This document shows positions 10,977 through 30,773 of a stretch of DNA of 64,000 bases, piece after piece; position 1 is the first letter of the stretch, and the number at the start of each line of letters is the position of its first letter. Position numbers and translations under genes: made by a program. Location of the stretch: IMG/VR virus record IMGVR_UViG_3300028592_000004, positions 1 to 64,000 of that record; one strand, given 5' to 3'. The notes under the pieces were generated by a model. It did not search any database, was not told where the DNA came from, and was given only the letters and a program-made list of their open reading frames with translations.

Positions 10977-11629
10977 TCCCTTGCCTCTCCCGTGTAGGTC
11001 TTGCCACACGCCCGCGACCAGCCGTCCGGAATGTCCGGCTCAAAGACGGTGCCAAACTTAACCTTTCGGCAGCCACAAGCCCAGATCGTCCCCTTCGGAC
11101 TGATCAGCATGTCCTCGCAACAGCACCAGTCGTCGTTTGACTGGATGCCGTTCTTGAGAGCCGAGCCGTGAGGAGTGATGATCGTGTTCGACCGCACACC
11201 CTCGTGGTTCTTCCGGCGTTGCAGGTCGCGAAACGCGACAACGACAGCCTTGTCGATCGGGTCGTGCCACTCGTCTTGCGAGAGCACAGCCTCCAGCTTT
11301 CCTTCAGCGCACAGTCGAGCCAGCCGGAGAGCCGTCTTCGTCTGTGAGCCGTTGGTGATGATCAGCAGCGGGATACCGCTGTTGGAGAGCATCACTTCCT
11401 CACGGCGGTCCCACTCGTGGTACTCCAGCGCCCGCGTGACGAACGGCCAGAATTCCGGATGAAGCGTCGGTTCACCGCCACCGAGGCAGAAGTGATCACC
11501 GCGGTCGTGCGTGAGGCCCAGCGCCCGCAGAAAGACCTCACGTGACATGTCGACACCGATGCCCGGTCTGCAGCTGAAACAGCAGTGGGCACAGGCCATA
11601 TCGCAGCGTGTCGTGATCTGGATGTAGAT
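10973..11629 (-). CDS. Radical SAM protein, apparent ATC start
   Basis: IYIQITTRCDMACAHCC gives CxxxCxxC; GGEPTLHP; ITNG; C-terminal CCC...ACGC. Confidence 0.8.
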   Translation of the reverse strand: MYIQITTRCDMACAHCCFSCRPGIGVDMSREVFLRALGLTHDRGDHFCLGGGEPTLHPEFWPFVTRALEYHEWDRREEVMLSNSGIPLLIITNGSQTKTALRLARLCAEGKLEAVLSQDEWHDPIDKAVVVAFRDLQRRKNHEGVRSNTIITPHGSALKNGIQSNDDWCCCEDMLISPKGTIWACGCRKVKFGTVFEPDIPDGWSRACGKTYTGEARE

Positions 11630-11631
11630 GA

Positions 11632-11877
11632 CTACCCTCCGGCGTGAGCGAACTCAGGCGCGCTCTCGGCGAAGTCCTCCACAGTGCACAGCTCAACGAG
11701 CGACGTCGGGCTAACCGAGATCAGGTCGCCAGTCGGCGAAGCGCCGTAAACGAGCCGCGGGTTGAGCCCGTGATGCTGCACGGACTTTGCGCTCAGTCGG
11801 AGATGGACCTTGCCACCGCTCCGCTTCCGGAAGTACTGCCCTTCGGCAATGACCTCCGCGTCAACGATCAGTCTCAT
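11632..11877 (-). CDS. Hypothetical protein
   Basis: ATGA overlap. Confidence 0.55.
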   Translation of the reverse strand: MRLIVDAEVIAEGQYFRKRSGGKVHLRLSAKSVQHHGLNPRLVYGASPTGDLISVSPTSLVELCTVEDFAESAPEFAHAGG

Positions 11878-12107
11878 TTCGACTCCAGGATTTGAGGATC
11901 GAACGAGCTCATCTCCCAGTAGGCGAGAGGATCGAGATCGTCCCAGGCTTGATGTGGCAGATCGCTGAACTGAGGCGAGAATCTCGCTCGCCAGGACGCA
12001 GCAAATTGCCGGACATAGATACGTCTGACATTGACGACCCGGATCCGCGGCACAGGTTCGCTCGGATCCTTCCGACCGAGGCAGATGCAGTAATCGACCT
12101 CAGTCAT
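11874..12107 (-). CDS. Hypothetical protein
   Basis: MTEVDYCICL..., ATGACTGA overlap. Confidence 0.5.
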   Translation of the reverse strand: MTEVDYCICLGRKDPSEPVPRIRVVNVRRIYVRQFAASWRARFSPQFSDLPHQAWDDLDPLAYWEMSSFDPQILESK

Positions 12108-12405
12108 CCGCCGGCTCTCCCCCATCCGGATCCGGATTGGGCCTGTTGTGCCGGCTAGTCTGGTCGACCGTGAAGACTCCAGTCGCCGCGAGAACGCCCT
12201 GGATCCAACCCAGCCAACGGAAGGCTTTGTCGATCCGGTTGTCCCGCACAAACCCGATGATCCCGTCGCAGACGTAGATCAGGTGGTTGTGCTGCTGCTC
12301 GTCAGTCCACAGGCTCCAATCCAGTTCGACTGGACCGCGGACCGGCTCGCCCTTGAGCAGCTTTCGGTAGAGCTGCGCCACCTCAATGATCTTTTCGTTC
12401 GTCAC
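12100..12405 (-). CDS. Hypothetical phage protein (RWLGWIQG motif)
   Basis: HLIYVCDGI...KAFRWLGWIQGVL; paralog at 30783. Confidence 0.65.
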   Translation of the reverse strand: MTNEKIIEVAQLYRKLLKGEPVRGPVELDWSLWTDEQQHNHLIYVCDGIIGFVRDNRIDKAFRWLGWIQGVLAATGVFTVDQTSRHNRPNPDPDGGEPADD

Positions 12406-12415
12406 ACTGTGCCTT

Positions 12416-12526
12416 TCAAATGCTCCAGTACTGCGGAGGGTCGTCGTTCCGTCCCCAGAAGAGGATGATCAGAACAACGATCCCAACCGCGACATAGAAA
12501 CGCCAGTCGCTCGCAGCATCTTGCAT
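12416..12526 (-). CDS. 36-aa single-TM protein
   Basis: Own translation MQDAASDWRFYVAVGIVVLIILFWGRNDDPPQYWSI; AAGGA upstream. Confidence 0.55.
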   Translation of the reverse strand: MQDAASDWRFYVAVGIVVLIILFWGRNDDPPQYWSI

Positions 12527-20057: not shown

Positions 20058-20337
20058 CGTCTTCCTCGGTTTCGTCGAGTTCTTCCAGGTCCGCTTCCAG
20101 CTCTTGCAACTCCTCCCCGATCTCTTCGGCGTAGTTCTCCTCGACTGAGAACAGCAGCGTATGGATCGAAAACTCACCGTTACGATGAGCGAGGTGGCAC
20201 AAGTCGACCATCAGATCCGTGATGGCACTCATGGGATCCGCGGTCAGCACTGAGGGGTGATCCCCGCAGGCTTTCACGAATGTTTCGAGCGCTTCCTGCG
20301 CCCAGTCAGCCCGTTGGTCGTTCGTGGGCGTTGTCAT
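20038..20337 (-). CDS. Small acidic protein
   Basis: C-terminus EEIGEELQELEADLEELDETEEDDDADEN. Confidence 0.6.
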   Translation of the reverse strand: MTTPTNDQRADWAQEALETFVKACGDHPSVLTADPMSAITDLMVDLCHLAHRNGEFSIHTLLFSVEENYAEEIGEELQELEADLEELDETEEDDDADEN

Positions 20338-20780
20338 GATGGCTTCTCGGGAGCAGGAATCGGTTCAAGCCGAGTCCGCTCGATGAACTTTTTCGCGGCG
20401 GACGCCAACGCGTTCCACTGCTCAGTGCTGACCTGGACTTTCGTCCAACCGTCTGCCCCGGGGTGACTCATACTTTCAGCCAGAACTCCAGCCACCCGCC
20501 GCACGATCTGGATCGCCTGGTGGGCATCGGAAAGATCGTCATACTGCGGTCGGAACTGCTGTACGGCGAGATCGTCTTCCCACCGGTCGTCGAACATCTG
20601 CATGATGTCGTACTGCACGGTCCCCATCCGTTCGAACAGTTCTCGCAGGTGGAATGCGAGTCTGGCACGCTCTGAAGCGTAGGTCGTAGGTGGGGACAGT
20701 TCTTTGACGACCTCTCTGATCAGGTCGGCGCCGGCGCAGGCCTCCGCTACCCGAGCCAGCAATTTAGTTGCCAGGGCCAC
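20334..20780 (-). CDS. Hypothetical protein
   Basis: AAGGAGG before GTG. Confidence 0.6.
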   Translation of the reverse strand: MALATKLLARVAEACAGADLIREVVKELSPPTTYASERARLAFHLRELFERMGTVQYDIMQMFDDRWEDDLAVQQFRPQYDDLSDAHQAIQIVRRVAGVLAESMSHPGADGWTKVQVSTEQWNALASAAKKFIERTRLEPIPAPEKPS

Positions 20781-20795: not shown

Positions 20796-21119
20796 TTAGG
20801 GTCGGACTGCCGTCTCTCCTGTTTCGCCGGTCCGGATACGGATCGCCTCTTCCAGGTTGCTCACCCAGATGAGTCCGTCTCCAGTCTTACCGGTCCTGGC
20901 CTTTGCGATCGCTGCGACGGCCGCGTCGACCTCGCTGTCCAGGACCACGATGTCGAGCTTCAGCTTCGGCAGGAAGTCGGCGCAAAAGTCCTTCGGGTTT
21001 TGCTTCCGACCGATTCCACGAGCCTCGGTCACCGTCATCGCGTGGATGCCGGCTTCGAGAAGTGCTTGCTGGACATCCGACAGCTTGTAGTGGCGGATGA
21101 CCGCTTCGATCTTCTTCAC
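20796..21119 (-). CDS. glnB: PII-family nitrogen signalling protein with shortened T-loop
   Basis: MKKIEAVIR, MTVTEARGIGR, DFLPKLK, TGKTGDG, IRIRTGE align colinearly with GlnB/GlnK. Confidence 0.9.
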   Translation of the reverse strand: MKKIEAVIRHYKLSDVQQALLEAGIHAMTVTEARGIGRKQNPKDFCADFLPKLKLDIVVLDSEVDAAVAAIAKARTGKTGDGLIWVSNLEEAIRIRTGETGETAVRP

Positions 21120-21130
21120 GTCGATTCTCC

Positions 21131-21601
21131 TCAGACGACCTTGTGCTGGCGGTACACGACCGCCATGTCGACATGGCGGTCAGACTCTGGAAGCCGATAT
21201 CTGCAGGTCTTCGGTTCCGCGGTGAGGTCATAACCTTCTGAGGTTCCGTGGCGAAGCAACCACTTAATCCGGGCAACGGCCGCGTTCCGATTTGCACAGC
21301 CGGCCTGCATCAGGAACAGAAAGGACGCGAGCTGCCCGTTCAATCCAAGATGCGCGGCCGCTGCATCAAACACTCCACGTTGGCGGGCGTGGATGTCGTC
21401 ACCGTGCAGATCAAACAAAATGCACGCGTGCCCAGCAACACACGCAGTTGTCCCGCAGTTGTAGACTGCACCCTTCGTGCCTTTCTTCGCCTGGAACTTC
21501 CGCTCGGCTATCGAGCGCCCGAAGTAGATCTTGTAGTTGAACTTCTCGGGCGGAGATTCCAGCAGGTACTTCATCAACCTTCGCAAACGACCCTTTCGCA
21601 T
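21131..21601 (-). CDS. Hypothetical phage protein (CGTxAC-x-AG motif)
   Basis: FNYKIYF...NCGTTACVAGHA. Confidence 0.6.
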   Translation of the reverse strand: MRKGRLRRLMKYLLESPPEKFNYKIYFGRSIAERKFQAKKGTKGAVYNCGTTACVAGHACILFDLHGDDIHARQRGVFDAAAAHLGLNGQLASFLFLMQAGCANRNAAVARIKWLLRHGTSEGYDLTAEPKTCRYRLPESDRHVDMAVVYRQHKVV

Positions 21602-30357: not shown

Positions 30358-30773
30358 CCCTCCGCCCAGGAGAACCACTCTGCGCCAGCAGCAATCAATG
30401 CAAGGCGAACGGCTACCGACGCTGACACCATGTTGATGTATCCGATCCCGATGAACCATTCCTCGGGAGCTACTTGGCAACGCCCTACGCGGGCGTCTTC
30501 TGAGCCACTGTAGAGAAGACCGAGTTCCGGTTCGAGATCGGCTCGAATGTTGAGCTTGGCCAGGATCTCTTGCTTGAGGGTCAGCTTCTCCGCAGCAAAC
30601 CACTCAGGCTCGTAGTCGTCCTCTTCGTCGTCGAGTTCCTCATCATCGAACTCTTCGTCGTCCGCGCCTTCCGCTTCCTGCAGACGCTTAGCTTCCAGGA
30701 GATGTATGCGAGTGTAGAACTCCTGCGGCACCTGGACGCCGAAGAGAGCATGGACAAAGACGTCCGCGGACAT
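30354..30773 (-). CDS. Protein with acidic tract
   Basis: EAEGADDEEFDDEELDDEEDDYEPE; AAGGA before ATG. Confidence 0.6.
   Translation of the reverse strand: MSADVFVHALFGVQVPQEFYTRIHLLEAKRLQEAEGADDEEFDDEELDDEEDDYEPEWFAAEKLTLKQEILAKLNIRADLEPELGLLYSGSEDARVGRCQVAPEEWFIGIGYINMVSASVAVRLALIAAGAEWFSWAEG

What the first reader, a model, noticed from the sequence alone, without database searches (positions are those of the whole stretch)
20796..21119. Phage PII protein lacking the uridylylation site: candidate signal-blind or dominant-negative nitrogen regulator
Seen: between GR and DFLPK there are 9 residues (KQNPKDFCA), and the B-loop reads GDGL. Known: E. coli GlnB has 15 residues there (Q39-V53), including Tyr51 which GlnD uridylylates, and reads GDGK (Lys90 binds nucleotide). 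The phage protein has a 6-aa T-loop deletion, no Tyr51 equivalent, K90L and G27A, but keeps K58, R101 and R103. PII proteins are trimers and can form heterotrimers. Inference: it could poison or lock host PII control of GlnE/NtrB/AmtB/NAGK, or sequester ATP/ADP/2-oxoglutarate.
Basis: partly seen in the sequence, partly recalled or inferred. Interest (0 to 1): 0.75.

Follow-up and report, generated by a model that had tools for sequence, protein, structure and literature searches.

The report
Phage PII regulator with clipped T-loop
A 229-kb soil jumbo phage that probably infects Planctomycetes carries a stolen copy of the bacterial nitrogen-sensor protein PII whose signalling loop and sensing pocket have been selectively remodelled, so it probably interferes with host nitrogen control or has taken on a new job, but no function has been tested.

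Summary
Window 20796-21119 (-) encodes an intact 107-aa PII protein (PF00543, E 3e-24). Against E. coli GlnB it lacks six T-loop residues (E44-A49, including Arg47) and has Phe at Tyr51. The loop holds no Tyr, Ser or Thr. It also carries G27A, F36I, Q39K, K90L, F92W and a 1-aa deletion near residue 80.

It is not an assembly error: the DNA is identical in at least five independent soil assemblies. It is also unique. No other protein with this deletion appeared in searches of billions of proteins, IMG/VR, GTDB genomes or eight related jumbo phages, which have no PII at all.

The gene derives from a Planctomycetota PII that sits in an amt–σ54 activator–PII×3–glnD cluster, and it lies on a very long branch. 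Changes at conserved positions are concentrated in residues 36-53 (11 of 13, against 5 of 39 elsewhere). A mixed trimer with host-type PII is predicted (0.89 against 0.01 for controls).

My best reading (about 0.4) is an unmodifiable, 2-oxoglutarate-blind, output-crippled PII that interferes with host PII signalling. The rivals are a new ligand or target, and decay. There is no evidence of expression or function. I rate it a new variant of a known kind, of moderate interest.

The parts
20796..21119 (-). CDS of the 107-aa phage PII variant (GTG start; TAA stop followed by an in-frame TGA)
   Evidence: ORF list; PF00543 E 3e-24; matches to PDB PII chains at E about 1e-26; the N-terminus MKKIEAVI aligns to residue 1 of canonical PII.
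20964..21011 (-). Codons 37-52, the shortened T-loop GRKQNPKDFCADFLPK. The deletion junction lies between Lys43 (20991-20993) and Asp44 (20988-20990). Gln39 is Lys, Tyr51 is Phe, and Arg47 is absent.
   Evidence: Alignments A1 and A2; 11 of 13 conserved positions in residues 36-53 are changed; model pLDDT is below 50 for residues 36-48.
20871..20882 (-). Codons 80-83, the B-loop GDGL (GGA GAC GGA CTC), equivalent to K90L
   Evidence: Sequence read directly; position 90 is Lys in 263 of 266 relatives scored.
21127..21132 (-). Shine-Dalgarno GAGGAG, 7 nt upstream of the GTG start, overlapping the TGA stop of the upstream gene
   Evidence: Read from the sequence.
21131..21601 (-). Upstream co-oriented gene of 156 aa, function unknown (phrog_889). 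It stops 11 nt before the PII start.
   Evidence: no Pfam hit; absent from 8 related jumbo phages.
20334..20780 (-). Downstream co-oriented gene of 148 aa, function unknown, with its own AAGGAGG ribosome-binding site 15 nt after the PII stop
   Evidence: absent from 8 related jumbo phages.

Best explanation
The gene is a host-derived PII (GlnB/GlnK-type) captured by one lineage of a 229-kb soil jumbo phage, most probably from a Planctomycetota host. It has since been remodelled at its signal-input and signal-output parts.

Shown by the analyses:
- The ferredoxin-like core and the subunit interface are retained.
- The T-loop is cut from 19 to 13 residues. It lacks Arg47 (the residue that plugs Amt channels) and Tyr51 (the GlnD modification site).
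- The effector cleft has lost Gln39 (the only protein ligand of the Mg2+ that bridges ATP and 2-oxoglutarate) and Lys90 (the salt bridge to the beta-phosphate).
- Gly35, Gly37, Arg38, Lys58, Gly87, Asp88, Gly89, Arg101 and Arg103 are kept, and an aromatic residue remains at position 92.

Inferred:
- The protein still forms trimers and may still bind an adenine nucleotide weakly.
- It cannot report 2-oxoglutarate, cannot be uridylylated, and cannot make the T-loop contacts that canonical PII uses for Amt, GlnD, the NtrB/σ54 circuit and GlnE.
- Made in an infected cell, it would act as an interfering PII. It could co-assemble with newly made host PII into mixed trimers that carry fewer working T-loops, or it could compete for T-loop-independent surfaces.
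- Either way host PII output would weaken, and ammonium uptake and assimilation would be uncoupled from the cell's nitrogen status during phage replication.
For: Identity and integrity:
- PF00543 match over the full length.
- Intact ORF with a good ribosome-binding site.
- Both indels are in frame.
- GC 60.5% and GC3 0.76 match the neighbouring phage genes.
- The ESM Atlas model has pTM 0.82, and the AF2 model shows the beta-alpha-beta-beta-alpha-beta fold.

Selective remodelling rather than random decay:
- 11 of 13 conserved positions in residues 36-53 are changed, against 5 of 39 elsewhere (Fisher p = 4e-6).
- Identity to the family consensus outside the loop is 74%.

Residue roles come from the literature. 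Gln39, Lys58 and Arg47 are described in PMC3198391. Lys90, Phe92, Arg101 and Arg103 are described in PMC8395244.

Origin and host circuit:
- The tree places the gene on the Planctomycetota side of a 100/99 branch.
- The best genome hits are Planctomycetaceae.
- The nearest relative lies in an amt–σ54 activator–PII×3–glnD cluster.
- GlnD-type and GlnE-type proteins occur in 5 of 5 such genomes.
- The phage also encodes a DUF1559 protein, a family I know as characteristic of Planctomycetes.

Mixed trimer: ipSAE 0.89 against a best control of 0.01. In the tool's calibration 51 of 78 solved complexes and 2 of 108 mismatched pairs reached the mark.

The phage has no Amt, no glutamine synthetase and no second PII, so the protein must act on host components or alone.

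Engineered T-loop-deleted PIIs remain folded and still bind some partners independently of effectors (bioRxiv 10.64898/2026.08.10.743959; PMC11617674).
Against: - There is no evidence of expression. No RNA run was listed.
- There is no evolutionary conservation. All copies are identical in DNA, no diverged homologue with the deletion exists in any collection searched, and 8 related jumbo phages have no PII. Selection on the variant therefore cannot be demonstrated.
- The trimer prediction may simply recall solved PII trimers. The tool itself says a pass shows likeness, not binding.
- Identity at the predicted interface (67%) is not significantly higher than elsewhere (55%, p = 0.24).
- PII trimers are very stable and exchange subunits slowly (my own knowledge). 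Only host PII made after infection could be poisoned, and jumbo phages that carry their own RNA polymerase often shut down host transcription.
- The terminal branch is about 8 times the median, which also fits relaxed constraint.
Confidence: 0.4

Rival explanations
1. Neofunctionalised PII. The trimeric scaffold is kept, but the shortened loop and the rebuilt cleft (Q39K, K90L, G27A, F36I, I86T, F92W) now recognise a different small molecule or a different protein partner. That partner could be of phage or host origin and possibly unrelated to nitrogen. One example would be binding or turning over an adenine-containing metabolite or an immune signalling nucleotide.
For: - The changes cluster in exactly the ligand cleft and the loop, while the core is kept.
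- PII-superfamily trimers with short (10-12 residue) T-loops that bind adenosyl ligands at the subunit interface are already known as phage counter-defence enzymes: SAM lyase and SAM-AMP lyase (PMC12255297).
- The gene lies in a lineage-specific array of small genes of unknown function, typical of host-takeover or anti-defence regions.
- The phage carries other counter-defence-like modules, such as NAMPT with an NMNAT-like protein and a Nudix protein.
- Other PF00543 proteins with GDGL exist (P0213, P0192).
Against: - No sequence match to any family other than PF00543.
- No candidate catalytic residues could be identified.
- No partner gene is conserved next to it.
- No ligand prediction could be run.
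Confidence: 0.27
2. Decaying passenger. This would be an auxiliary PII gene acquired from the host that lost its function through the T-loop deletion and is drifting. It would have no current role.
For: - It occurs in a single lineage only.
- The terminal branch is very long (3.13 against a median of 0.4).
- Residues that are essential in every canonical PII are lost.
- Related phages have no PII.
- No population variation is available to show purifying selection.
Against: - The ORF is intact, both indels are in frame, and it has a strong ribosome-binding site.
- 34 of 39 conserved positions outside the loop are retained, and the fold is predicted with confidence.
- Codon composition is fully adjusted to that of the phage, which implies long residence without disruption.
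- Phage genomes are generally thought to purge useless DNA quickly (my own knowledge).
Confidence: 0.2
3. Ordinary auxiliary metabolic PII that simply supplements host GlnB/GlnK function, like the marine viral glnK genes.
For: Viral PII genes are known and are thought to act this way (PMC8115048). All 17 full-length IMG/VR PII loci recovered here are of canonical length.
Against: - Described viral GlnK keep Tyr51 and sit next to amtB (PMC8115048). This one lacks Tyr51, Arg47, Gln39 and Lys90 and has no amt neighbour.
- It scores 96 and 87 bits against NCBIfam equivalog cut-offs of 202 and 181.
Confidence: 0.05
4. Assembly or sequencing artefact, or a host fragment mis-joined into a phage contig.
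For: None found.
Against: - The gene and its flanks are identical in at least five assemblies from different runs and assemblers (ENA, Logan, JGI).
- Phage genes lie on both sides in one co-oriented array.
- Composition matches the phage.
Confidence: 0.01

Closest known systems
Canonical bacterial PII (GlnB/GlnK), specifically the glnD-linked PII paralogues of Planctomycetaceae
   Same: - Same Pfam family, fold and N- and C-terminal segments.
- 55-65% identity.
- It shares the planctomycete R9-H10-Y/F11 motif.
- Predicted to co-trimerise.
   Different: - The T-loop is 6 residues shorter.
- It lacks Tyr51, Arg47, Gln39 and Lys90.
- It fails both PROSITE-type PII signatures and the NCBIfam equivalog cut-offs.
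- It is not linked to amt or glnD.
Engineered T-loop deletion PIIs: E. coli GlnB Δ47-53, A. brasilense GlnZ Δ42-54 and S. elongatus PII ΔT-loop
   Same: They keep the trimeric core and lack the T-loop apex. They lose T-loop-dependent receptor contacts. They still bind some partners through the B-loop or lateral face, with the response to 2-oxoglutarate lost (bioRxiv 10.64898/2026.08.10.743959; PMC11617674). Jiang, Zucker and Ninfa 1997 is cited inside PMC11617674; I could not read that paper here.
   Different: Those are laboratory constructs with a wild-type effector cleft. The phage protein is natural, keeps a 13-residue loop, and has additional cleft substitutions.
Virus-encoded GlnK/PII auxiliary metabolic genes of marine phages
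   Same: A host-derived PF00543 gene carried by a tailed phage (PMC8115048; 17 full-length IMG/VR loci).
   Different: The described ones keep Tyr51, have the canonical 112 aa, are about 70% identical to host PII, and are paired with amtB. This one has none of these features.
NifI1/NifI2 heteromeric PII of methanogens
   Same: This is a precedent for natural mixed PII trimers in which one subunit type has a shorter T-loop (bioRxiv 10.1101/2025.09.09.675011).
   Different: NifI proteins are nif-linked and archaeal or anaerobe-specific, and their short-loop subunit still binds effectors. No sequence affinity beyond the family level was found (9p1x_H E 1.5e-10).
Phage SAM lyase (Svi3-3, T3 SAMase) and SAM-AMP lyase
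   Same: Phage-encoded trimers of the PII superfamily with a short T-loop and a ligand site at the subunit interface (PMC12255297).
   Different: No detectable sequence relationship. Those are enzymes with a catalytic Glu at the end of the T-loop. The phage protein is a recent derivative of canonical PII.

Membership tests
PII signal-transduction family (Pfam PF00543) | Full-length match to the P-II domain above the gathering score | tested here: met
   85.8 bits against a cut-off of 25, residues 1-99 on profile positions 1-102; 82.7 bits in the six-frame search of the phage's own genome.
Canonical GlnB/GlnK (NCBIfam NF008111 and NF007946 equivalogs) | Score above the equivalog cut-off | tested here: not met
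   96.3 bits against a cut-off of 202, and 87.1 against 181.
Canonical GlnB/GlnK | T-loop of canonical length with the uridylylation motif Y-[KR]-G-[AS]-[AE]-Y (Tyr51). The pattern is recalled from PROSITE, not fetched. | tested here: not met
   The motif is absent. There are 9 residues instead of 15 between GR and DFLPK, and no Tyr, Ser or Thr in the loop. The motif is present in 241 of 269 relatives.
Canonical GlnB/GlnK | B-loop/C-terminal signature [ST]-x(3)-G-[DY]-G-[KR]-[IV]-[FW]-[LIVM], which includes Lys90. The pattern is recalled from PROSITE. | tested here: not met
   The sequence TGKTGDGLIWV fails at Lys90, which is Leu. The pattern matches 261 of 269 relatives.
Canonical GlnB/GlnK | Side-chain ligands for MgATP and 2-oxoglutarate: Gln39, Lys58, Lys90, Arg101, Arg103 and an aromatic residue at 92 (PMC3198391, PMC8395244) | tested here: not met
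   Gln39 is Lys and Lys90 is Leu. Lys58, Arg101 and Arg103 are kept, and Phe92 is Trp. Actual binding cannot be tested with these tools.
Canonical GlnB/GlnK | Trimer assembly | tested here: inconclusive
   In silico only. A 2+1 mixed trimer scored ipSAE 0.89 against a best control of 0.01, and this may reflect memory of solved PII trimers. A homotrimer was not modelled.
Viral GlnK/PII auxiliary metabolic genes (as described in PMC8115048) | Tyr51 conserved and the gene adjacent to amtB | tested here: not met
   Phe sits at the Tyr51 column. No Ammonium_transp match exists anywhere in the phage, and the neighbours have no Pfam hits.
Phage SAM lyase / SAM-AMP lyase (PII superfamily enzymes) | Sequence family membership and a catalytic Glu at the C-terminal end of a 10-12-residue T-loop | tested here: not met
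   Only PF00543 and phrog_28307 (unknown function) match. The loop length of 13 is similar, but no structural superposition with a lyase was run.

The most novel reading that the evidence does not exclude
The phage may have converted a captured host PII into something that is no longer a nitrogen regulator: a short-loop trimeric binder or enzyme for an adenine-containing metabolite or an immune signalling nucleotide. It would then be a living intermediate showing how phage PII-fold counter-defence proteins, such as the SAM and SAM-AMP lyases, can arise from cellular PII.
Probability: 0.07. Interest if true: 0.85.

Novelty: new variant of a known kind. Interest (0 to 1): 0.5.

Why it matters
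PII is one of the most widespread signalling proteins, and it integrates carbon, nitrogen and energy status. Phage-borne PII genes have so far been read as plain helpers of host metabolism.

A natural variant has lost the modification site, the target-contacting loop apex and the 2-oxoglutarate/Mg2+ ligand, yet keeps the trimer scaffold. If it works as proposed, it would be the first candidate viral interfering PII: a way for a phage to unhook host nitrogen assimilation from host sensing. It would also be a natural counterpart of the T-loop deletion mutants used for decades in the laboratory.

It also adds to the very small set of clues about how phages of Planctomycetes, which are almost unstudied, manipulate their hosts. 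If the gene is merely decaying, it is a minor curiosity.

Tried and rejected
Searches for a diverged homologue that shares the deletion all failed:
- The word-indexed search of 5.8 billion proteins returned only the protein itself. The next hit is a canonical 112-aa PII at 58% identity.
- The exhaustive HMMER search of 1.84 billion representatives gave 150 best hits, all with canonical spacing except P0213, which is 3 residues short.
- IMG/VR searched with the protein gave nothing. Searched with an alignment it gave 17 full-length loci, all 336 nt.
- GTDB genomes gave 526 relatives, and the best 80 are canonical.
- 301 Planctomycetota genomes gave none with the deletion among the 150 matches listed.
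- The phage GenBank collection gave 16 records, all below 47% identity.

Synteny in related phages: 8 jumbo phages with about 54% identical RNAP beta carry no PII and no homologues of the two flanking genes.

Population signal: strain contigs carry no substitutions in the gene, so no dN/dS is possible. Sequencing runs with a low share of the region hold only identical fragments plus PII pieces from other organisms.

Expression: no RNA run was listed.

A phage-encoded partner was sought and not found. There is no Amt, no glutamine synthetase and no second PII. A Pfam inventory of 147 larger ORFs shows no nitrogen-assimilation enzyme among the 50 families displayed.

Interface-specific conservation was tested and is not significant (p = 0.24).

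The context of the other GDGL variants (P0213, P0192) is uninformative because the contigs are short.

Jiang et al. 1997 (PMC179260) could not be read, and nothing was found on PDB entry 5OVO.

I rejected the assembly-artefact explanation, the plain auxiliary-PII explanation, and the idea of an ATP/2-oxoglutarate sink. The last is implausible on stoichiometry and because the ligand residues are lost.

Full report
**1. What is there**

Window 20796-21119 on the minus strand is an intact ORF of 107 codons with a GTG start. A GAGGAG ribosome-binding site at 21127-21132 lies 7 nt upstream of the start and overlaps the stop codon of the preceding gene. The next gene follows 15 nt after the PII stop and has its own AAGGAGG site.

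The product matches Pfam P-II over its whole length (E 3e-24, 85.8 bits against a cut-off of 25) and about 40 solved PII structures (best E 3e-26). It scores only 96 and 87 bits against the NCBIfam GlnB and GlnK equivalog models, whose cut-offs are 202 and 181.

**2. Residue mapping**

I took E. coli K-12 GlnB from the annotated genome (L031:2071-2409:-) and aligned it with the phage protein.

The alignment adds the following:
- Q39K, K40Q, G41N and H42P.
- Loss of E44-A49, which includes Tyr46 and Arg47.
- E50D, Y51F, M52C and V53A.
- F36I, I86T and F92W.
- A second 1-aa deletion at about residue 80.

The position of the gap within the loop is not uniquely determined. Even so, the remnant GRKQNPKDFCADFLPK holds no Tyr, Ser or Thr at all, so none of the known T-loop modifications is possible.

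Neither matches the phage protein.

The literature assigns the lost residues clear roles:
- Gln39 is the only protein ligand of the Mg2+ that bridges ATP and 2-oxoglutarate.
- Arg47 is the residue that enters the Amt channel (PMC3198391).
- Lys90 forms a salt bridge to the ATP beta-phosphate.
- Phe92 stacks on the adenine (PMC8395244).

**3. Not an artefact, but unique**

The identical protein occurs on contigs of at least five independent assemblies (two ENA, three Logan, plus JGI). Their DNA is 99.2-99.995% identical to the window, and the PII gene itself has no difference. Eight soil-metagenome runs hold the region.

No other protein with this deletion turned up in any of these searches:
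- 5.8 billion clustered proteins.
- 1.84 billion representatives scanned exhaustively.
- IMG/VR.
- GTDB genomes.
- 301 Planctomycetota genomes.
- GenBank phages.

The 17 full-length viral PII loci recovered from IMG/VR all span 336 nt, which is the canonical length.

**4. The replicon and the host**

The window is the first 64 kb of a single 229,210-bp contig with 61% GC. It is an IMG/VR virus record that CheckV rates 100% complete.

It encodes a tail sheath, DNA polymerase, DnaB-type helicase and split multisubunit RNA polymerase. It also encodes a terminase, baseplate J, ligase, RecA, ThyX and NAMPT. It is therefore a jumbo phage.

About 50 co-oriented small genes surround the PII gene. Only PII and a weak radical-SAM match have any Pfam hit.

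Eight related jumbo phages, whose RNAP beta is about 54% identical, carry neither a PII nor homologues of the two flanking genes. The gene therefore lies in a lineage-specific accessory region.

Three lines of evidence point to a Planctomycetota host:
- The closest PII sequences are from Planctomycetaceae, at 55-65% identity.
- A maximum-likelihood tree puts the phage protein on the Planctomycetota side of a 100/99 branch. Its terminal branch is 3.13, against a median of 0.4.
- The phage encodes a DUF1559 protein, a family I know as typical of Planctomycetes.

The host assignment remains an inference.

**5. The host circuit it came from**

The nearest cellular relative sits in a cluster of amt, a σ54 activator, three tandem PII genes and glnD. 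All five Planctomycetota genomes tested have GlnD-size and GlnE-size proteins with the GlnD_UR_UTase domain, and the GlnD-size gene lies beside a PII gene in four of them. Uridylylation of Tyr51 is therefore probably part of host signalling, and the phage copy has lost that site.

The phage itself has no Amt, no glutamine synthetase and no second PII. This differs from the marine viral glnK-amtB pairs, which keep Tyr51 (PMC8115048).

**6. Pattern of change**

Among 116 canonical 112-aa relatives, 52 positions are at least 90% conserved. The phage protein differs at 16 of them, while the relatives differ at a mean of 0.82 and at most 6.

Eleven of 13 conserved positions in residues 36-53 are changed, against 5 of 39 elsewhere (positions 17, 27, 62, 90 and 92). 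Fisher's exact test gives p = 4e-6. Identity to the consensus outside the loop is 74%.

Further points argue for a maintained fold with targeted remodelling of the input and output parts:
- Both indels are in frame.
- Codon composition matches the phage.
- The fold is predicted with confidence (ESM Atlas pTM 0.82; AF2 model with the canonical secondary structure and a disordered loop at 36-48).

These points cannot prove selection, because no diverged copy exists.

**7. Mixed trimer**

A model of two copies of the planctomycete PII plus one phage PII scored ipSAE 0.89, against 0.01 for the best of three controls. In the tool's calibration 51 of 78 solved complexes and 2 of 108 mismatched pairs reached the mark.

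The tool warns that this may come from memory of solved PII trimers, so it shows likeness rather than binding. Identity at the predicted interface (67%) is not significantly above that elsewhere (55%, p = 0.24).

**8. Mechanism**

I commit, at about 0.4, to an interfering PII. It would be a trimer-competent subunit that cannot be uridylylated, cannot sense 2-oxoglutarate, and cannot make T-loop contacts. It would weaken host PII output by co-assembly or by competition. That would tend to keep Amt open and assimilation on, whatever the cell's nitrogen status.

The shown steps are the sequence features, the origin, the context and the predicted fit. The inferred steps are trimerisation, loss of ligand binding, loss of target contacts and any effect on the host.

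The main weaknesses are these:
- No expression data are available.
- PII trimers are known to be very stable (my own knowledge).
- The gene occurs in a single lineage.

The rivals, with my estimates, are:
- A new ligand or partner (0.27). Phage SAM and SAM-AMP lyases, which are PII-fold trimers with 10-12-residue T-loops (PMC12255297), show that such a route exists.
- Decay (0.2).
- An ordinary auxiliary PII (0.05).
- An artefact (0.01).

Engineered T-loop-deleted PIIs stay folded and bind some partners in an effector-independent way (bioRxiv 10.64898/2026.08.10.743959; PMC11617674). This fits both the best explanation and the first rival.

**9. Verdict**

The protein belongs to the PII family but fails the tests for a canonical GlnB/GlnK.

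Novelty: a new variant of a known kind. Interest is moderate (0.5). The feature is real, clean and unusual, and it is directly testable with standard assays. It rests on one phage lineage and has no functional evidence.

Noticed in passing
L117:2299-9213 (Planctomycetaceae MAG contig JAKFUG010000027.1): The nearest cellular relatives of the phage gene lie in a cluster of amt, a σ54 activator, three tandem 112-aa PII genes and glnD. Three tandem PII paralogues beside glnD is an unusual arrangement, and it would give plenty of scope for mixed trimers in the host itself.
   Followed up: partly
P0213 (L032:415-747) and P0192 (L033:144-866): Other natural PF00543 proteins also have Leu at position 90. 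P0213 (110 aa) has a T-loop 3 residues shorter and reads GDGLVL. P0192 is a tandem double PII whose second domain reads TGSTGDGLIW, nearly the same as the phage B-loop TGKTGDGLIW, and it also ends in RP. Their contigs are too short to show context; the neighbours are a beta-barrel porin and a metallo-beta-lactamase-fold protein.
   Followed up: partly
P0123 (362 aa) and P0122 (182 aa): The top hits of the exhaustive search include a triple-tandem PII fusion and a protein that looks like one and a half PII domains fused together. Covalently linked PII pseudo-trimers may be worth a separate look.
   Followed up: no
window 20982-20984 (Cys46 of the phage PII): The shortened loop contains a cysteine, at the column that is Thr or Met in canonical PII. 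No canonical relative in the set has Cys there. A redox-sensitive or metal-binding loop is conceivable but untested.
   Followed up: no
window 11095-12423: Between two otherwise 99.2% identical strains of the phage (L002 against the window), one stretch of about 1.3 kb drops to 85% identity with 30 gaps, and substitutions are clustered just before it. This is a local hypervariable gene next to the radical-SAM gene.
   Followed up: no
window 30621-30663 and genome C1:102346-102388: An exact 43-nt direct repeat is shared between two distant places of the phage genome. It could be a regulatory element or a repeated gene segment.
   Followed up: no
whole phage genome (window plus L004-L012): The gene inventory is unusual for a phage. 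It includes a Ro60/TROVE protein with a vWA domain, a caspase-domain protein, a CAP-domain protein, PAS-domain proteins, a sulfotransferase, a DUF1559 protein of planctomycete type, NAMPT with a cytidylyltransferase-like (NMNAT-type) protein and a Nudix protein, and split multisubunit RNA polymerase subunits. 198 of 211 heuristically called ORFs lie on the minus strand.
   Followed up: partly
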